Of a DNA stretch of 64,000 nt, positions 7,478 to 64,000 are shown piece after piece (the first letter of the stretch is position 1; every line of letters begins with the position of its first letter). The notes under the pieces are model-generated. The model made no database searches. It saw nothing but the letters and a program-made list of their open reading frames with translations, and was not told where the DNA came from. The stretch covers positions 7,378,001 through 7,442,000 of the forward strand of contig CATNEN010000002.1 of NCBI GenBank assembly GCA_950097015.1, in the 5' to 3' direction. The stretch is from Macrostomum hystrix (Eukaryota; Animalia; Platyhelminthes). Position numbers and translations under genes: made by a program.

Positions 7478-8737
7478 GTCAGTGTCTGTCTGATGCTGTC
7501 AGGGTCTGTCTGATGCTGTCAGGGTCTGTCTGATGCTGTCAGGGTCTGTCTGATGCTGTCAGTGTCTGTCTGATGCTGTCAGTGTCTGTCTGATGCTGTC
7601 ACGGTCTGTCTGATGCTGTCAGTGTCTGTCTGATGCTGTCACGGTCTGTCTGATGCTATCAGTGTCTGTCTGATGCTGTCAGTGTCTGTCTGATGCTGTC
7701 ACGGTCTGTCTGATGCTGTCAGTGTCTGTCTGATGCTGTCAGTGTCTGTCTGATGCTGTCACGGTCTGTCTGATGCTATCAGTGTCTGTCTGATGCTGTC
7801 AGTGTCTGTCTGATGCTGTCACGGTCTGTCTGATGCTGTCAGTGTCTGTCTGATGCTGTCAGTGTCTGTCTGATGCTGTCAGTGTCTGTCTGATGCTGTC
7901 AGTGTCTGTCTGATGCTGTCAGTGTCTGTCTGATGCTGTCACGGTCTGTCTGATGCTGTCAGTGTCTTTCTGATGCTGTCAGTGTCTGTCTGATGCTGTC
8001 AGTGTCTGTCTGATGCTGTCACGGTCTGTCTGATGCTGTCAGTGTCTGTCTGATGCTGTCACGGTCTGTCTGATGCTGTCAGTGTCTGTCTGATGCTGTC
8101 AGTGTCTGTCTGATGCTGTCAGTGTCTGTCTGATGCTGTCAGTGTCTGTCTGATGCTGTCAGTGTGTCTGATGCTGTCACGGTCTGTCTGATGCTGTCAG
8201 TGTCTGTCTGATGCTGTCAGTGTCTGTCTGATGCTGTCAGTGTCTGTCTGATGCTGTCAGTGTCTGTCTGATGCTGTCACGGTCTGTCTGATGCTGTCAG
8301 TGTCTGTCTGATGCTGTCACGGTCTGTCTGATGCTGTCAGTGTCTGTCTGATGCTGTCAGTGTCTGTCTGATGCTGTCAGTGTCTGTCTGATGCTGTCAC
8401 GGTCTGTCTGATGCTGTCAGTGTGTCTGATGCTGTCAGTGTCTGTCTGATGCTGTCACGGTCTGTCTGATGCTGTCACGGTCTGTCTGATGCTGTCAGTG
8501 TCTGTCTGATGCTGTCAGTGTCTGTCTGATGCTGTCAGTGTCTGTCTGATGCTGTCAGGGTCTGACCTGAGGCTGTCATGGTCTGATCTGAGGCTGTCAT
8601 GGTCTGATCTGAGGCTGTCAGGGTCTGATCTGAGGCTGTCATGGTCTGATCTGAGGCTGTCAGGGTCTGATCTGAGGCTGTCATGGTCTGTCTGATGCTG
8701 TCAGGGTCTGATCTGAGGCTGTCAGGGTCTGTCAATC
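7478..8737. repeat. 20-bp minisatellite (TGTCAGTGTCTGTCTGATGC)n, ending in 21-bp variants
   Basis: Visible 20-bp column periodicity. Lies between two convergent 3' ends. Confidence 0.97.
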
Positions 8738-26348: not shown

Positions 26349-49018
<22,670 letters not shown>

Positions 49019-55510: not shown

Positions 55511-58500
55511 TCAGTAGACCCAATTCACTGGCACCCACTGGTGCTTTGTGTGCACCAGATCAACGCACTGCTTCAGCTGGGCGATGGTGTCCTCGATGTC
55601 ATTGTTGATGATCTTCAAATCGAAGTAGTGCCCATAGTGCCTCTCCAGCAGCTCGCTTTCCTTCGCTAGACGCTCCAGACTGCCGTCCTGCGGATTGCAG
55701 AGATTGGCAGCGAGATTGCTGTTGGAATGCGGCCTTCTGGATTGGGGGTCAGCTGACCTTCTGGATTGGGGTCCTCTGACGTTTTGGATTGGGGGTCAGC
55801 TGACGTTCTGGATTGGGGGTCAGCTGACTCTCTGGATTGGGGAGTCAGCTGACTTTCTGGATTGGGGGTCAGCTGACCTTCTGGATTGGGGGTCAGCTGA
55901 CCTTCTGGATTGGGGGTCAGCTGACGTTTTGGATTGGGGGTCAGCTGACGTTCTGGATTGGGGGTCAGCTGACTCTCTGGATTGGGGAGTCAGCTGACTT
56001 TCTGGATTGGGGGTCAGCTGACCTTCTGGATTGGGGTCAGCTGACCTTCTGGATTCGGAGGTCAGCTGACCTTTGGATTGGAAGTCAGTTGACCATCCGT
56101 ATTGGGGGGTCAGCTGACGTTTTGGATTGGGAGTCAGCTGACTCTCTGGATTGGGGGTCAGCTGACTCTCTGGATTGGGGAGTCAGCTGACTTTCTGGAT
56201 TGGGGAGTCAGCTGACTTTCTGGATTGGGGAGTCAGCTGACTTTCTGGATTGGGGAGTCAGCTGACTTTCTGGATTGGGGAGTCAGCTGACTTTTTGGAT
56301 TGGAGGTCGGCTTACATTCAGTATATGTAAATAAGGTGACCATCAGTATATGGGGGTCACGTGACCTTCAGTATAAGGGGGTCAGGTGACATTAAGGGGT
56401 TGGAAGGTCGGGTGATAGGCATTAACAGCGGCTCACATTGAGTCCGTGCACGTCGCTCATTGCGCTGAGCTCAGGAGCCGCAATGAAAACAACGTAGGGC
56501 GCGAACTCGGCAGTTCGCAGGACGCGCAGAGCCTGCGGCTCAACATCCAGGATGGCCACCTTGCCGTGCCGGTGAATCTCTCGGATGGTGTCCAGCTTGG
56601 TGCCGTACATGGCGTCCTCGTGCGTGCCATACTCCAGGTACTCATTGTTAGTGATGTCCCGCATCATCTCTTCTCGGCTGACAAAATAATAGCTGCGGCC
56701 GTTCACCTCATTCTTGGCTGGTGGCCGGGTTGTGTCTGCGAGGAGGTTGGGATTTACAAGGCATTGCTAAGTTCATTCCTAGATAGGCGATAGAATGGAT
56801 TGCTAGTCCATTCCTAGATAGGGGATAGAATGGATTGCTAGTCCATTCCTAGATAGGGGATAGAATGATTGCTAGTCTATTCCTAGATAGGAGGATAGGA
56901 TCGATTGCTAGTCTATTCCTAGATAGGAGGATAGGATGGATTGCTAGTCTATTCCTAGATAGGAGGATAGGATCGATTGCTAGTCTATTCCTAGATAGGA
57001 GGATAGGATCGATTGCTAGTATATTCCTAGATAGGAGGATAGGATGGATTGCTAGTCTATTCCTAGATAGGAGGATAGGATCGATTGCTAGTCTATTCCT
57101 AGATAGGAGGATAGGATCGATTGCTAGTCTATTCCTAGATAGGAGGATAGGATCGATTGCTAGTCTATTCCTAGATAGGAGGATAGGATGGATTGCTAGT
57201 CTATTCCTAGATAGGAGGATAGGATGGATTGCTAGTCTATCCACCAAGGATGACTGAATAAAACGGATTGCAAGGCTACTCCAAAAGATTGATAAAGTAC
57301 AACACAGAGTCAGGCAGCTCACGCGGTATAGGATAGGCGAATCTGTCCTGGGCGGCCTGTATGAGTGTGTTTTTGATGTGCCGCCTGCCAACGCCGTGAG
57401 CTCCCAGCAGCACCAGAGTCTTGCGCCGGAAATTCGTCAGCTGGACAACCTCCTCGTAGGTGACCATCTCCAGCTGGTCGTAGGCTGCCGTGGCAAACTG
57501 CTGCTGCTGCTGCTGCTTACCCGTAGCGCCGACTCCGCGTTTCCCGCCGGACTTGGTGCCCAGACGCCGGCCGAACGAGAACAGGCCGGTGCAGTTGACC
57601 GTGTCCTTCTTCGATCTTTCAATGGCATTGCAGGCGGCGCGCCACTCTTGCAGCTCAGGCGACGGGATCAGACTGGCCGGAGTGTTGCTGGGGGCGTTCC
57701 AGGCCCGCGCCTGTGGGAGTGGAGAGATACAAAAGCGCTAAAGTCAAAGTGGGTCTTGTGTCAAGGTGAGTCGTGGGTCAAGGTAAGTCCTGGGTCAAGG
57801 CGATTTTTCGGACAAGGCGAGTCTAGGGTCAAGGCGAGTCTTGTGTCGAGGTGAATCTTGGGTCAAGGCGAGTCTTGGGTCAAGGCGAGTCTTGGGTCAA
57901 GGCGAGTCTTGGGTCAAGGCGAGTCTTGGGTCAAGGCGAGACTTGGGTCAAGAGGTAAGTCTCGAGTCAACTATTAGCATGGCGCACCTGCCACCAGTGG
58001 TGGTCGTCCTTGCTGATGACCTGCAGAATGTCGCCAACGCGAAACCGGATGCCGGCCTGAGGACACGGATGCACATCGTCCTCTTCCGGATTGTAGTTGA
58101 ACATCGCCTTGACGTAGATCTGCGGGCGCGGGGACTAAGTACTTTAATTTGCACTTTTAAACTAAGAAACATAACATATTGTTTTTAAAACGCTCACAAA
58201 CTACTACTGAAGTCTTGCTAGGTAAGGAGTAACGTCAGCATTTTAATAAATAAATAATTTAAATTTACTTACCTTTATAGAAACCTAAAGTTTTTGCTTC
58301 ACGACTAACAGTAAAAAATACTCGTAGAACTACATTTTTATTGGCAGTAAAACAATTACAAAAATCATTTTTACATAACAAAGAACGCAAACAACAAAAA
58401 ATTTTTTTTTTAATTTTTTTGCAGAAACTGGGATGATGAGCAGAGGATCTGGGATGTTGATTTAAGCAACATGGGGATCTGGGATGTTGATTTAAGCAAC

Positions 58501-61500
58501 ATGGGGATCTGGGATGTTGATTTAAGCAACATGGGGATCTGGGATGTTGATTTAAGCAACATGGGGATCTGGGATGTTGATTTAAGCAACATGGGGATCT
58601 GAGTTGTTGATTTAAGCAACATGGGGATCTTGGATGTTGATTTAAGCAACATAGGGATCTGGGATGTTGATTTAAGCAACATGGGGATCTGGGATGTTGA
58701 TTTAAGCAACAAGGGGATCTGGGATGTTGACTTCAGCAACATGGGGATCTGGGATGTTGATTTAAGCAACATGGGGATCTGGGATGTTGATTTAAGCAAC
58801 ATGGGGATCTGAGATGTTGATTTAAGCAACATGGGGATCTGGGATGTTGATTTAAGCAACATGGGGATCTGGGATGTTGATTTAAGCAACATGGGGATCT
58901 GGGATGTTGATTTAAGCAACATGGGGATCTGAGTTGTTGATTTAAGCAACATGGGGATCTTGGATGTTGATTTAAGCAACATAGGGATCTGGGATGTTGA
59001 TTTAAGCAACATGGGGATCTGGGATGTTGATTTAAGCAACAAGGGGATCTGGGATGTTGACTTAAGCAACATGGGGATTTGGGATGTTGATTTAAGCAAC
59101 ATGGGGATCTGGGATGTTGATTTAAGCAACATAGTGACCTGAGATGTTGATTTAAGCAACATGGGGATCTGGGATGTTGATTTAAGCAACATGGGGATCT
59201 GGGATGTTGATTTAAGCAACATGGGGATCTGGGATGTTGATTTAAGCAACATGGGGATCTGGGATGTTGATTTAAGCAACATGGGGATCTGGGATGTTGA
59301 TTTAAGCAACATGGGGATCTGGGATGTTGATTAAGGCAACATAGTGACCTGAGATGTTGATTTAAGCAACATGGGGATGTTTAAGTGTATCGAACTAATC
59401 TGAGGATCTGAAAGTTTTGCTATGCAACACAAAATCAAGCAAAGCAGAAAACTACGAAATCAAAGAGTCGAGGAATCAAGACACTGAGCTAACACATTAA
59501 CTGGTGAGTAATTAACAAAGGCCAGGTGGCTGCAGGAACGCCAAGTGGGCAGGTAGGGATAGCCATACCTCACACTGCATGGGGTGGTTGCGGTAGCTGG
59601 GCACTATTTTCAAAGTGACGCTGCCTCGAGCCTCTTTCTGCAAGTGCAAGGAGTTTTTGTGTTTATGTTTTGAAGCCGAAGGGTTCAAGATGATGTAGTC
59701 AAAGCACTCCGATTGGCCAGTCTGTGATATCAGTTTTATAAAGACATTCTCAACACGCCTGTGTCAGCATCCGTTCATTAGAAGTTGCAGGTTCAGTGAC
59801 AGCTAACAACTGAGTCCCTGAAGTTGTTGAGGGTAACAACTGAGTCCCTGAAGTTGTTGAGGGTAACAACTGAGTCCCTGAAGGTGTTTAGGCTAATAAC
59901 TGAGTCCCTGAAGTTGTTTAGGCTAATAACTGAGTCCCTGAAGTTTTTTAGGCTTATAACTGAGTCCCTGAAGGTGTTTAGGCTAATAACTGAGTCCCTG
60001 AAGTTGTTTAGGCTAATAACTGAGTCCCTGAAGTTTTTGAGGCTAATATCTGAGTCCCTGAAGTTGTTGAGGCTAATAACTGAGTCCCTGAAGTTGTTGA
60101 AGGTGAGACCAGAGTCCCTAAAGTGACTGAGGCTAACAGCTAAGTCTCTGAAGTGACCGAGGCATGAGTTCAAAATGAAAAGCTTCACTACGTCTGGGTC
60201 GGAAGCGTCAATCAATAGTTAAGAACTTTAAATAATACTTGCAAGGGCAGAAATAGACGACATGCACCTTAAGTTTAAAGTTTAGAGCGATATATAAAAT
60301 GATAGTTATAGATAAATCAGTTGCTTTGTCACCTGACACCCACAATTTGAAAGATAAACACCACGTAGCGCTATGTGCAATAATTTTCTACTTGATACGT
60401 TCTGCTCAATGACAACAGAACGGTTAGTCTGAAATTTGAATTCGCGCCAAAATAGATTCAAGTCTAGTTTTGTAAGCTTAAATTTAGCTTAAATGACAAT
60501 TTACGTTTCTTTCTACTTGTAGTAGAGTAAAAGGCGTTTAAGACTGCTAATTTTGGTCAGTGTTTTGTCGAAAAACGGAAAAAAATTCTGATTTATTCAA
60601 GTAAGATTTTGTTATAAACCATACTTGGCGCGAATTCAACTAGCATTTAGCAGCAAGTGAGTAAAAATCGATAATCTGAAGCAATTAAAAATCAATAAAT
60701 GTGTTCAGTAAATCTACTGGATAGATATAAGTACAAAAGCCTGTTAATAATTTTGCACCCGAGAAACTGACATTGTGCAATCAACGGGATAAACGTGAAT
60801 AGAAAAAAGCATTACAAAGCATATTATTATGACAGCAGTCTCTGTTTCTCTGTGACTTCTAAAATTCTTATTTTAGAATATTCAGGTTTCAAAAGCGGCG
60901 AGTGTTATTTCGTAGCTGAAGCAGAATGGATTATTTTCACAGAGGGTTTGCAAACGATGTGACAGCTTGGTAAACACGAGAACAATGTGAGATGCTTTTA
61001 CCAGAGCTGGTCAGTACACTGCATCATAAAAATCTTTCTCCTATTCTATTCCCAGTTCAATTCCTCACATCTCCTAGTTCTATTCCTTATGTATCCTAGT
61101 TCTATTCTTCATATTTTCCAGTTCTGTTCCTCATAACTCAGTTCTATTCCTCATATATCCCAGTTCTATTACTAATATATCCCAGTTCTATTCCTCATAT
61201 CTCCTAGTTCTGTTCCTCATGTCTCCTAGTTCTATTCCTCATATTTTCCAGTTCTGTTCCTCATGTTTCCTCGTTCAATTTCTCATATATCTTCGTTCTA
61301 TTCCTCAAGATCCCAGCTCTATTCCTTATCTTCCTGTTCTATTCCTCATCTCCCTGTTCTATTCCTCATCTTCCTGTTCTATTCATCATCTCCCAGTTCT
61401 ATTCCTCATCTCCCTGTTCTATTCCTCATCTCCCAGTTCTATTCCTCATCTCCCTGTTCTATTCCTTATCTCCCTGTTCTATTCCTCATCTCCCAGTTCT

Positions 61501-64000
61501 ATTCATCATCTCCCTGTTCTATTTCTCATCTGCCTGTTCTATTCCTTATCTCCCAGTTCTATTTCTCATCTCCCTGTTCTATTCCTTATCTCCCTGTTCT
61601 ATTCCTCATCTCCCAGTTCTATTCATCATCTCCCTGTTCTATTCCTCATCTCCCAGTTCTATTCCTCATCTCCCTGTTCTATTCCTTATCTCCCTGTTCT
61701 ATTCCTCATCTCCCAGTTCTATTCATCATCTCCCTGTTCTATTTCTCATCTCCCTGTTCTATTCCTCATCTCCCAGTTCTATTCCTCATCTCCCTGTTCT
61801 ATTCCTTATCTCCCTGTTCTATTCCTCATCTCCCAGTTCTATTCATCATCTCCCTGTTCTATTTCTCATCTGCCTGTTCTATTCCTTATCTCCCAGTTCT
61901 ATTTCTCATCTCCCTGTTCTATTCCTCATCTCCCAGTTCTATTCCTCATCTCCCTGTTCTATTCCTCATCTCCTAGTTCTATTCCTCATCTCCCTGTTCT
62001 ATTCCTCATCTCCCAGTTCTATTTCTCATCTGCCTGTTCTATTCCTCATCTCCCAGTTCTATTCATCATCTCCCTGTTCTATTCCTCATCTCCCAGTTCT
62101 ATTTCCCATCTGCCTGTTCTATTCCTCATCTCCCAGTTCTATTCATCATCTCCCTGTTCTATTCCTCATCTCCCAGTTCTATTTCTCATCTGCCTGTTCT
62201 ATTCCTTATCTCCCAGTTCAATTTCAAATCCTAATTAAGCAGTCATCTACTGTCCACAGGCCAGGCAGATATCAAGAAGCGAACCTCGTCACCAACAGTT
62301 TTAAATTTCAAAGAGAAAGCTGCACTCGGGCACACAGGCACAGGTGCACACAGGTTTTACCTCCTTGAAGGTCTGGCACAGTGCTTTAGGCTGACACAGG
62401 CTGGGTACAATTTTGATTGTCACCATGCCGCGTAGGGCTTTCTGCGAATTTGCGCGGCAGTGATTTAATTAAACTTTCACTTGCAATTCTACTTATAGTA
62501 GACTGTAAGGCGTTTAAAGCCAGCAGTTTTAGGCATTGGAATTTTGTTCGAAATAAAAATAGCAAGAGGGCATACAGTAATTTTTAATTAAAAAAAATGC
62601 AACTAAAAGCAAAAACTAAAATGGCCAATCAGAGTGCTTGCTTACGTAAACAGTTTTTGGTCGTGAAAGAATTACAATGCACAATAAGTAAACCCGGCCT
62701 AATATGACTAAATTTGACTAAAATATATTGTAAGATAATTTACATATTTCACATGAGGTAGATGTACATTCTGCCATAGTCTGTCAGACATTCCACATAA
62801 TCTGTCAGACATTCTACATAACCTGTCAGACATTCTAAATAATCTGTCAGACATTCTACATAATCTGTCAGACATTCTACATAATCTGTCAGACATTCTA
62901 CATAATCTGTCAGACATTCTAAATAATCTGTCAGACATTCTACATAATCTGTCAGACATTCTACATAATCTGTCAGACATTCTACATAATCAGTCAGAAA
63001 TCTTGAAACAATATGCAATACACCCTAAATCTGTAACCTATTCTAGCAAATTCAGGCTAATAAAAGTTCACGCACCAGCAGTCTCTGCAGCGCCTCAACT
63101 GATTGGCCCAAAACTGGCTCGCCGTTGATTTCGCGAATCTCGTCGCCAACGTGCAGAGTGCCTGATAAAAAAAGCGAATAAAATATAGTAACAGCCAATC
63201 TACTAGCTACTTAAAGTAGAGTTTTAAATAAATATCAAATAATGTATAAAAATCGCTAATCTGTTAGAATAGATGAAGGTGTGACAATAGATGAAGGTGT
63301 GACAATAGATGAAGGTGTGACAATAGATGAAGGTGTGACAATAGATGAAGGTGTGACAATAGATGAAGGTGTGACAATAGATGAAGGTGTGACAATAGAT
63401 GAAGGTGTGACAATAGATGAAGGTGTGACAATAGATGAAGGTGTGACAATAGATGAAGGTGTGACAATAGATGAAGGTGTGACAATAGATGAAGGTGTGA
63501 CAATAGATGAAGGTGTGACAATAGATGGAGGTGTGACAATAGATAAAGGTGTGACAATAGATGAAGGTGTGACAATAGATGAAGGTGTGACAATATATGA
63601 AGGTGTGACAATAGATGAAGGTGTGACAATAGATGAAGGTGTGAGAATAGATGAAGGTGTGACAATAGATGAAGGTGTGACAATAGATGAAGGTGTGACA
63701 ATAGATGAAGGTGTGACAATAGATGAAGGTGTGACAATAGATGAAGGTGTGACAATAGATGAAGGTGTGACAATAGATAAAGGTGTGACAATAGATAAAG
63801 GTGTGACAATAGATAAAGGTGTGACAATAGATGAAGGTGTGACAATAGATAAAGGTGTGACAATAGATCAAGGTGTGAGACTAGAGGATGGTGAATAAAG
63901 ATAAAGGTGAGAACAGATGGTGAGAATAGATCAATGATGTCGGAGCAGATACGCGTCTCACCCTGTCTGTGAATCATTCCGCCGTGCATAATTCTGGCCA
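55511..64000 (-). CDS. CASK: CASK/LIN-2 MAGUK, 3' part (PDZ-SH3-HOOK-GK); 5' exons outside the window
   Basis: Exons 64000-63962, 63161-63076, 59637-59569 (or 62441-62361), 58119-57988, 57710-57323, 56735-56437 and 55687-55511, phases consistent. Motifs [93 protein letters not shown], and terminal QWVPVNWVY*. Confidence 0.96.
55735..56390. repeat. 24-bp minisatellite (GGATTGGGGGTCAGCTGACCTTCT)n
   Basis: Period 24. Contains the 12-bp palindrome GGTCAGCTGACC. Confidence 0.95.
56760..57245. repeat. 36-bp minisatellite (TCCTAGATAGGAGGATAGGATCGATTGCTAGTCTAT)n
   Basis: Period 36. Fills a CASK intron. Confidence 0.95.
57745..57955. repeat. 17-bp minisatellite (GGGTCAAGGCGAGTCTT)n
   Basis: Period 17. 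Fills a CASK intron. Confidence 0.9.
58430..59380. repeat. 30-bp minisatellite (ATGGGGATCTGGGATGTTGATTTAAGCAAC)n with a 330-bp higher-order duplication
   Basis: Period 30. Variant series repeats at 58601 and 58931. Confidence 0.97.
59795..60150. repeat. 30-bp minisatellite (TAACTGAGTCCCTGAAGTTGTTTAGGCTAA)n
   Basis: Period 30. Confidence 0.93.
61040..62225. repeat. 20-bp pyrimidine-rich minisatellite (ATTCCTCATCTCCCTGTTCT)n
   Basis: Period 20. Confidence 0.96.
62361..62441 (-). CDS. CASK: Alternative (duplicated) CASK PDZ C-terminal exon A
   Basis: TTCGCAG|..81 nt..|GTAAAA, phase 0-0. Encodes [27 protein letters not shown], paralogous to exon 59637-59569. Confidence 0.75.
62778..63000. repeat. 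21-bp minisatellite (TCTGTCAGACATTCTACATAA)n
   Basis: Period 21. Confidence 0.93.
63265..63890. repeat. 18-bp minisatellite (GATGAAGGTGTGACAATA)n
   Basis: Period 18. Confidence 0.97.

What the first reader, a model, noticed from the sequence alone, without database searches (positions are those of the whole stretch)
59569..62441. CASK carries two paralogous exons for the end of the PDZ domain (likely mutually exclusive splicing)
Seen in sequence: between the PDZ exon ending ..ALQRLL (63076) and the SH3 exon IYVKAMF.. (58119) lie two phase 0-0 exons with proper splice sites. Exon A (62441-62361) encodes [27 protein letters not shown] and exon B (59637-59569) encodes [23 protein letters not shown]. 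They share K..RG.VT.KIVPS and a terminal E. Established knowledge: B resembles canonical CASK (RGSITFKIVPSYR), and this segment forms the last PDZ strand and the PDZ-SH3 linker of the PDZ-SH3-GK supramodule. Inference: exon duplication yields two CASK isoforms with different PDZ-SH3 coupling. I do not know of this being described.
Basis: partly seen in the sequence, partly recalled or inferred. Interest (0 to 1): 0.7.

Follow-up and report, generated by a model that had tools for sequence, protein, structure and literature searches.

The report
Duplicated CASK PDZ-strand exon, co-included
A free-living flatworm's CASK scaffold gene carries an extra, conserved copy of the small exon for the last strand of its PDZ domain, and RNA shows this copy spliced in front of the original exon rather than replacing it.

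Summary
Exon A (62441-62361) and exon B (59637-59569), minus strand, are paralogous, phase 0-0 and flanked by AG/GT.

The reading "mutually exclusive" is not supported.
- Transcript contigs from four public runs of one study join the PDZ exon (63076) to exon A (62441).
- In two of those runs the same contig continues from exon A (62361) straight into exon B.
- The contig break points imply that PDZ>B also exists. Exon A is therefore an alternatively included cassette exon. The A+B mRNA encodes two consecutive copies of the last PDZ strand.

Exon A is old and under selection.
- A-type exons with intact frame and splice sites precede a near-invariant B exon in four Macrostomum lignano CASK loci or gene models.
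- Against the closest locus, dN/dS is 0.11 at dS 0.9.
- None of about 270 other CASK-like proteins examined, including those of parasitic flatworms, has one.

An 18-bp intronic duplex brackets exon A. It is conserved with two compensatory changes in the closest M. lignano locus and probably loops exon A out.

Which strand copy completes the PDZ fold is unresolved; AlphaFold was inconclusive. An A-only isoform is hinted at but not shown.

The scan had not noted this gene before. It had noted other duplicated-exon pairs in this genome.

The parts
63962..64000 (-). 3' end of the preceding PDZ exon (..[12 protein letters not shown], ends CAGG|gtgag); the exon runs off the window
   Evidence: the loose end at 63162 in all four runs reads this exon's last 30 nt.
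63076..63161 (-). PDZ exon (G)[28 protein letters not shown], carrying the alpha-B helix; starts in phase 1 and ends in phase 0
   Evidence: Pfam PDZ; contigs cover 63076-63162.
62622..62639 (-). Box 1: 5' arm of a conserved long-range RNA duplex, in the intron PDZ>A, 198 nt upstream of exon A
62489..62503 (-). Small conserved hairpin-like block (CTACT..AGTAG), about 50 nt upstream of exon A
   Evidence: It is one of only three blocks conserved with L008 in this intron. Function not tested.
62361..62441 (-). Exon A: alternatively included paralogue of exon B, 27 aa ([14 protein letters not shown] + variable tail ending FKE)
   Evidence: (joint 63076>62441 in 4 runs; loose end at 62361 equals the start of exon B).
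59702..59719 (-). Box 2: 3' arm of the duplex, in the intron A>B, 65 nt upstream of exon B
   Evidence: (the only block conserved in this 2.7-kb intron).
59569..59637 (-). Exon B: the canonical last-strand (beta-F) exon of the CASK PDZ domain, 23 aa
   Evidence: matches human CASK PDZ 1KWA residues 71-87; its first 28 nt follow exon A in the contigs.
57988..58119 (-). First SH3 exon (IYVKAMF...HHWWQ), 44 aa
   Evidence: (Pfam SH3).

Best explanation
Exon A is a lineage-specific, conserved cassette exon. It arose by tandem duplication of the exon for the last beta strand (beta-F) of the CASK PDZ domain, which is exon B. The gene makes at least two mRNAs: the canonical PDZ>B>SH3 form, and PDZ>A>B>SH3, in which exon A is inserted in frame ahead of exon B. 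The A+B protein therefore has two consecutive copies of the beta-F segment. Inference: the A copy follows helix alpha-B at the canonical spacing and keeps every core position of beta-F, so it most likely completes the PDZ fold (my odds about 55:45). Its variable tail plus the displaced B copy would then lengthen the PDZ-SH3 linker from about 9 to about 36 residues. That would loosen or retune the PDZ-SH3-GK supramodule, much as vertebrate CASK does with its linker exons 19 and 20. Exon choice is probably set by an 18-bp RNA duplex between a box upstream of exon A and a box just upstream of exon B. When the duplex forms, exon A is looped out and skipped. Shown here: the exons, the joints PDZ>A and A>B, conservation and purifying selection, and the conserved complementary boxes. 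Inferred: the PDZ>B joint in this species (from contig break points), the effect of the duplex, and the protein-level consequence.
For: RNA: joint 63076>62441 with GT..AG in 4 of 4 runs. Coverage is exon-only with zero depth on unique intron, so the runs behave as RNA. In X3 and X4 the loose end after 62361 is the exact first 28-29 nt of exon B. The A-specific contig starts 26 nt inside the PDZ exon, and the upstream contigs end 4 nt past it. This is what a 31-mer assembly graph gives if a second path shares the AAAG that begins both A and B, which points to PDZ>B. The contig's end 28-29 nt into B is where that second path would rejoin.
Conservation: A-type exons with AG/GT and an intact frame lie between the PDZ exon and B in M. 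lignano loci L008, L001 and L009 and in model P0003. The lengths are 27, 29, 34 and 29 aa. For window versus L008, exon A has dN 0.104 and dS 0.907, and neutrality is rejected (Fisher p = 2e-4). The flanking exons have dN 0.023 and dS 0.92. Residues L3, M6, I9 and L15 and an ending in [FL]KE mark four of the five A copies and no B copy; the L009 copy has diverged.
Co-inclusion elsewhere: models P0170, P0173, P0168 and P0003 carry A followed by B. P0002, P0151, P0165, P0166 and P0167 carry B only.
Duplex: 18 bp, -35 kcal/mol, and the motif occurs only at these two places in 64 kb, with 0 of 100 shuffles reaching two matches. Box 2 is the only conserved block in the 2-2.7 kb intron. All 18 pairs are kept in L008, with two compensatory changes and two wobble-compatible changes.
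Against: All four runs come from one study and are held only as assembled contigs. Isoform ratios cannot be measured, and the whole transcript is not phased. The PDZ>B joint in this species is inferred, not read. AlphaFold2 on a paralogue's A+B segment gave low confidence for both strand copies, so the protein-level model is untested. The duplex was not found in the more distant paralogues L001 and L009, and its effect on splicing is inferred. Some M. lignano models add extra residues around exon A (a 45-nt 5' extension; a 14-aa spacer) that may be prediction artefacts.
Confidence: 0.75

Rival explanations
1. True mutually exclusive splicing. The functional isoforms would be PDZ>A>SH3 and PDZ>B>SH3, and A+B would be a minor by-product.
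For: The exons are tandem paralogues of equal phase. In X1 and X2 the A-specific contig stops exactly 1 nt after exon A. That fits a branch between A>B (AA..) and A>SH3 (AT..), because exon B and the SH3 exon both begin with A.
Against: A>B is read directly in X3 and X4 with no branch. All four gene models that contain an A-type exon also contain B, and no A-only protein was found among about 280 retrieved. Both exons are multiples of 3, so nothing enforces exclusion through the reading frame. No complementary boxes bracket exon B.
Confidence: 0.08
2. Same splicing, different protein outcome. In the A+B isoform the invariant exon B strand still completes the PDZ fold, and exon A forms a 27-aa loop or hairpin inserted between helix alpha-B and strand beta-F.
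For: Exon B is the near-invariant copy and aligns with the canonical strand in every other animal. AlphaFold2 predicts short strands in both copies with low confidence, so neither is excluded.
Against: A loop would not need to keep the full beta-F pattern (G.VT.KIVP) under purifying selection while its tail varies freely in sequence and length. A hydrophobic, strand-prone insert next to its own binding groove would compete for it.
Confidence: 0.3
3. Exon A is non-functional exonisation or splicing noise, kept by chance.
For: It is missing from the NCBI annotations of loci L001 and L008. Its tail evolves faster than neighbouring exons (p = 0.016).
Against: It is kept in frame with intact splice sites in five loci or models separated by saturated synonymous divergence. 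dN/dS is 0.11. The A-specific contig has word depth of the same order as the shared upstream contig in all four runs (a crude measure). Conserved regulatory boxes flank it.
Confidence: 0.05
4. The A>B joint is an assembly chimera, or comes from a paralogous gene or a retrocopy.
For: The contigs are short (108-136 nt) de Bruijn products, and the kind of run is not on record.
Against: Every 31-mer across the joint must exist in reads. The flanks match this window's exon A and exon B at 100%, whereas paralogues differ by 10-20% at the DNA level. The joint was seen in two runs. Unique intron DNA is absent from the runs, so they are not genomic.
Confidence: 0.02

Closest known systems
Vertebrate CASK alternative exons 19 (69 bp) and 20 (36 bp) in the PDZ-SH3 linker (PMC8208546)
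   Same: Same gene family and the same place in the protein: directly after the ..SYR....CE exon and before the SH3 exon. They are in-frame cassette exons that change the length of the PDZ-SH3 linker inside the PDZ-SH3-GK module. Exon 19 is also 69 bp. Insect and other CASKs show further small linker inserts at this site.
   Different: The vertebrate inserts are unrelated, disordered linker sequence placed after the beta-F exon. Here the insert is a paralogue of the beta-F exon itself, placed before it, so a structural strand is duplicated.
Tandem-duplicated, mutually exclusive exons (for example Dscam, 14-3-3 zeta, tropomyosin; reviewed in PMC9013439 and PMC9741552)
   Same: Origin by tandem exon duplication, equal phase, similar length, homologous sequence, both copies conserved, and alternative use.
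   Different: The defining rule, one and only one copy per transcript, is not met. A is spliced to B.
Exon choice through long-range intronic RNA pairing (competing or looping RNA structures; discussed in PMC9013439)
   Same: Conserved complementary boxes in the introns flanking an alternative exon, with compensatory substitutions between related loci.
   Different: There is a single pair of boxes that would loop out one exon, not a docking site with several competing selectors. The effect on splicing is not tested here.
Engineered 'alternate frame folding' proteins with a duplicated terminal segment (my own knowledge, not checked here)
   Same: One polypeptide has two copies of a strand that can each complete the same fold, but not both at once.
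   Different: Those are laboratory designs. Here the arrangement would be natural and switched on by splicing. Whether the two copies really compete is unknown.

Membership tests
CASK (MAGUK with CaM-kinase, L27, PDZ, SH3 and GK domains) | PDZ-SH3-guanylate kinase module in this order | tested here: met
   Pfam PDZ, SH3_1/SH3_2 and Guanylate_kin on the exons at 63159-63076, 58119-57988, 57467-57279 and 56706-56425.
CASK (MAGUK with CaM-kinase, L27, PDZ, SH3 and GK domains) | Closest relatives are CASK rather than other MAGUKs | tested here: met
   Exon B matches the human CASK PDZ structures 1KWA and 6NH9. Hits to the SH3 exon and to the paralogues are named CASK across animals, at 57-60% identity over the module.
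CASK (MAGUK with CaM-kinase, L27, PDZ, SH3 and GK domains) | N-terminal CaM-kinase domain and two L27 domains | not testable with these tools
   The 5' part of the gene lies beyond position 64000. The closest M. lignano model, P0166, has Pkinase and L27.
Mutually exclusive tandem-duplicated exons | Adjacent homologous exons of the same phase and similar length | tested here: met
   81 and 69 nt, both phase 0-0, 10 of the first 15 residues identical.
Mutually exclusive tandem-duplicated exons | Exactly one of the exons in every mature transcript | tested here: not met
   One contig carries PDZ, A and the start of B in X3 and X4. A+B is present in P0003, P0168, P0170 and P0173.
Cassette (skipped or included) exon | Transcripts with the exon | tested here: met
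   Joint 63076>62441 in four runs, and continuation 62361>59637 in two.
Cassette (skipped or included) exon | Transcripts without the exon | tested here: inconclusive
   In this species it is only inferred, from contig break points at PDZ+AAAG and 28-29 nt into B. B-only models exist for M. lignano paralogues (P0002, P0166, P0167).
Cassette (skipped or included) exon | Inclusion keeps the reading frame | tested here: met
   81 nt, no stop, phase 0-0.
Splicing controlled by long-range RNA structure | Complementary intronic boxes conserved with compensatory changes | tested here: met
   18 bp; two double-sided and two wobble-compatible changes between the window and L008, none disruptive. Only two sequences were compared.
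Splicing controlled by long-range RNA structure | Disrupting and restoring the pairing changes exon inclusion | not testable with these tools
   This needs a minigene or genome-editing experiment.

The most novel reading that the evidence does not exclude
The A+B isoform is a natural 'alternate-frame' PDZ domain. Two tandem copies of the last strand compete to complete one fold. The domain could then toggle between two states with different ligand-groove geometry and different PDZ-SH3 linker lengths. The state might be set by partners or modification, and the isoform itself is switched on by a splicing decision governed by a conserved RNA duplex.
Probability: 0.12. Interest if true: 0.75.

Novelty: new variant of a known kind. 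Interest (0 to 1): 0.45.

Why it matters
Textbook reasoning holds that a duplicated exon inside a globular domain must be used in a mutually exclusive way, because including both copies would break the fold. Here a duplicated strand exon is conserved under purifying selection and is nevertheless spliced in tandem with its parent. This happens in CASK, a key synaptic and polarity scaffold. It offers a natural test of how a PDZ domain copes with two candidate terminal strands. It is also a second, independent evolutionary route to tuning the PDZ-SH3 linker, which vertebrates tune with unrelated cassette exons. Finally, it is a compact candidate for splicing controlled by RNA structure in a flatworm that can be manipulated genetically. 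The event is lineage-restricted and no phenotype is known, so the general impact is moderate.

Tried and rejected
The joints into exon B and the SH3 exon were therefore not read directly.
With in-frame intron flanks added to reach 40 aa it found no candidate.
3. A word search restricted to the A-type segment of P0003 found only P0003 itself. No other annotated protein of 355-1129 aa shares its words.
4. A PDB sequence search with exon A found nothing. Pfam found nothing on exon A or exon B alone.
5. Genomic contigs of other organisms: L005 has a single B-type exon 170 nt after its PDZ exon and no A-type exon. L002 (Schistosoma), L003 and L004 did not contain the region and were uninformative.
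6. AlphaFold2 on P0003:181-421 (A + 14 aa + B) gave PDZ pLDDT of 43-71, with both strand copies at or below about 55. The B-only control, P0002:64-262, gave PDZ pLDDT of 64-92 and about 86 on the last strand. This does not decide which copy is used.
7. A 10-nt complement between the PDZ exon and box 1 occurs only in the window and is not conserved, so it was dropped.
8. A shuffle test of the best intron-by-intron duplex energy timed out. It was replaced by the motif-count shuffle.
9. DNA of the flanks of A and B shows no direct similarity, so the extent of the original duplication cannot be traced.
10. Literature searches for CASK with mutually exclusive exons, for PDZ with tandem exon duplication, and for Macrostomum with CASK found no description of this event.
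Full report
**1. The observation**

Each is preceded by ..cag and followed by gta... They lie between a PDZ exon and the first SH3 exon.
- The PDZ exon is 63161-63076. It starts in phase 1 and ends in phase 0 with ..EALQRLL.
- The SH3 exon is 58119-57988.

A six-frame motif scan finds only these two copies in the window. The exons around them hit Pfam PDZ, SH3 and Guanylate_kin. Exon B aligns to the last 17 residues of the human CASK PDZ structures 1KWA and 6NH9, whereas exon A alone reaches no PDB sequence. The introns are filled with minisatellites: 30 nt x 31 copies, 20 nt x 58, 21 nt x 11 and 18 nt x 35.

**2. RNA evidence**

The look-up of sequencing runs returned four runs of one study and one organism, held as Logan contigs with no kind on record.

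Coverage is exon-only, with zero depth on the unique intron and 100% identity, so these runs behave as transcriptomes. The main results were:
- All four runs hold a contig that joins 63076 to 62441, skipping 634 nt with GT..AG on the coding strand.
- That contig carries 26 nt of the PDZ exon plus the whole of exon A.
- In X3 and X4 it runs on for 28-29 nt. The reverse complement of those letters is exactly the start of exon B.

Exon A is therefore spliced to exon B.

The break points are informative, because Logan contigs end where the 31-mer assembly graph branches.
- Exons A and B both begin with AAAG. A branch between PDZ>A and PDZ>B predicts an A-specific piece starting 26 nt inside the PDZ exon, and upstream contigs ending 4 nt past that exon. 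Both are observed.
- The A-specific piece should rejoin the B path 29 nt into exon B. The observed values are 28 and 29.

I take this as strong indirect evidence that PDZ>B transcripts also exist.

In X1 and X2 the piece stops exactly 1 nt after exon A. That fits a further branch between A>B (AA..) and A>SH3 (AT..), but it is only a hint.

The mean word depth of the A-specific piece is 0.37-0.79 of that of the shared upstream contig. The tool warns that depth is a poor measure, so I conclude only that exon A is not a rare by-product.

**3. Relatives**

Earlier notes of this scan call the genome a Macrostomum flatworm. My searches agree, because the nearest public proteins are all from Macrostomum lignano.

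A full HMMER search with the SH3 exon and a word search with a paralogue gave several M. lignano CASK models.
- B only: P0002, P0151, P0165, P0166 and P0167.
- An A-type exon directly followed by B: P0170 and P0173 (the L001 type), P0168 (the L009 type, an NCBI model) and P0003.
- None is A only.

I fetched three M. lignano loci. In each, an A-type exon with AG/GT and an open frame lies between the PDZ exon and a near-invariant exon B.

| Locus | A-type exon | Length | Annotated in the NCBI model? |
|---|---|---|---|
| L008 | 26622-26702 | 27 aa | no |
| L001 | 7525-7611 | 29 aa | no |
| L009 | 1604-1705 | 34 aa, more diverged | yes |

None of the M. lignano models is identical to the window. 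L008 is the closest, with exons 83-91% identical at the DNA level and introns that cannot be aligned. The window is therefore either another Macrostomum species or a further paralogue.

**4. Selection**

| Comparison (window vs L008) | dN | dS | dN/dS |
|---|---|---|---|
| Exon A | 0.104 | 0.907 | 0.11 |
| PDZ, B and SH3 exons pooled | 0.023 | 0.92 | 0.025 |

For exon A, 6 of 62 non-synonymous sites changed against 10 of 19 synonymous sites (Fisher p = 2e-4). Against L001, the first 15 codons of exon A give dN 0.063 and dS 0.85.

The strand part ([13 protein letters not shown]) is conserved. The tail varies in sequence and in length (27-34 aa) but always keeps the frame and ends in KE. Residues L3, M6, I9 and L15 mark four of the five A copies and no B copy; the L009 copy has diverged. 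The duplication therefore predates the split of these loci.

**5. Distribution**

About 270 other CASK-like proteins retrieved here have a single B-type segment. They include Echinococcus, Opisthorchis, Fasciola, Paragonimus, Spirometra, Anoplocephala, Mesocestoides, molluscs, annelids, arthropods and vertebrates. An unidentified eukaryote contig, L005, has only a B-type exon.

A word search on the A-type segment found nothing beyond P0003. Unannotated alternative exons would escape such protein searches, so absence outside Macrostomum is provisional.

**6. A conserved RNA duplex**

Two intronic boxes are complementary.

| | Position | Location | Sequence |
|---|---|---|---|
| Box 1 | 62639-62622 | intron PDZ>A | AAGCACTCTGATTGGCCA |
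| Box 2 | 59719-59702 | 65 nt upstream of exon B | TGGCCAATCGGAGTGCTT |

- They form 18 bp: 17 Watson-Crick pairs and one G·U.
- The duplex of the two surrounding 32-mers has an energy of -35 kcal/mol, and each arm is unstructured on its own.
- The motif occurs only at these two places in the window, and 0 of 100 shuffles reach two matches.
- In L008 the same boxes sit at the same relative places, with box 2 lying 90 nt upstream of exon B.
- Box 2 is the only block conserved between the 2.7-kb and 2.0-kb introns.
- All 18 pairs are kept in L008. There are two double-sided compensatory changes (A-U to G-C, and G-C to A-U), two wobble-compatible one-sided changes and one bulge.

Such a duplex would loop out exon A and bring the PDZ donor close to the acceptor of exon B, which favours skipping. 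It was not found in L001 or L009. Its effect is inferred.

**7. Protein consequence (inference)**

Exon A keeps every core position of beta-F and follows helix alpha-B at the normal spacing. I therefore favour exon A supplying the strand in the A+B isoform. Its tail and the displaced B segment would then extend the PDZ-SH3 linker from about 9 to about 36 residues.

Vertebrate CASK varies the same linker with exons 19 and 20, and this has been proposed to tune the flexibility of the PDZ-SH3-GK module (PMC8208546).

The alternative is that B stays the strand and A forms a loop. This cannot be excluded.
- AlphaFold2 on the paralogue P0003:181-421 gave low confidence for the PDZ domain and for both strand copies.
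- The B-only control, run with the same shallow alignment, was confident.

**8. Verdict**

Exon A is a real, conserved, alternatively used paralogous exon, but it is co-included with its parent exon (a cassette exon) rather than mutually exclusive.

I found no paper describing this. Some database gene models already contain A+B without comment.

**Limits of this work**
- There was one study of RNA, available as contigs only.

Noticed in passing
window 57753-57952, 58445-59378, 59802-60154, 61050-62223, 62766-62998, 63268-63893: The CASK introns are largely built of minisatellites with 17-30 nt units and up to 58 copies. The 30-nt family also occurs, at 70-76% identity, elsewhere in the M. lignano loci L001 and L008, so it is a dispersed satellite family.
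   Followed up: partly
window 62489-62503 (-); L008 about 26551-26565: A 15-nt block about 50 nt upstream of exon A is conserved between the window and L008. Its arms are self-complementary (CTACT..AGTAG) and its loop varies. It may be a small hairpin or a branch-point element.
   Followed up: no
L001 7480-7524; proteins P0170 and P0173: Two M. lignano gene models start exon A 45 nt further upstream, adding RSADREL.LAIAALQ. The window's RNA uses the acceptor at 62441, and the window has no equivalent open extension.
   Followed up: partly
protein P0003 residues 284-297: A 14-aa spacer lies between the A-type and B-type segments. It begins VK, as a read-through of a gtaaa donor would. It is probably a gene-prediction artefact or an alternative donor. 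No DNA for this locus could be fetched.
   Followed up: partly
L008 26622-26702 and L001 7525-7611 (M. lignano GCA_002269645.1): The A-type exons are not part of the NCBI gene models BOX15_Mlig028881g1 and BOX15_Mlig005720g1, which are B-only.
   Followed up: yes
proteins P0006 and P0152 (Schistosoma margrebowiei); locus L002: Both annotation versions of this fluke's CASK-like gene jump from ..QKNTDEP straight to the SH3 domain and lack the PDZ core. No PDZ exons were found in the 16-kb locus. This could be an assembly gap, a mis-annotation or a real loss.
   Followed up: partly
protein P0041: An arthropod-like CASK model joins ..ALQKIL directly to the SH3 start, which skips the beta-F exon altogether.
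   Followed up: no
window 63099-63108 (-) versus 62623-62632 (-): The PDZ exon contains GGCCAATCAG, which is complementary to 10 nt of box 1. This could compete with box 2, but the match is absent in L008.
   Followed up: yes
window 62224-62291: Run X1 holds a 102-nt contig on the intron just downstream of exon A, next to the 20-nt satellite. It is probably repeat-derived or pre-mRNA.
   Followed up: no
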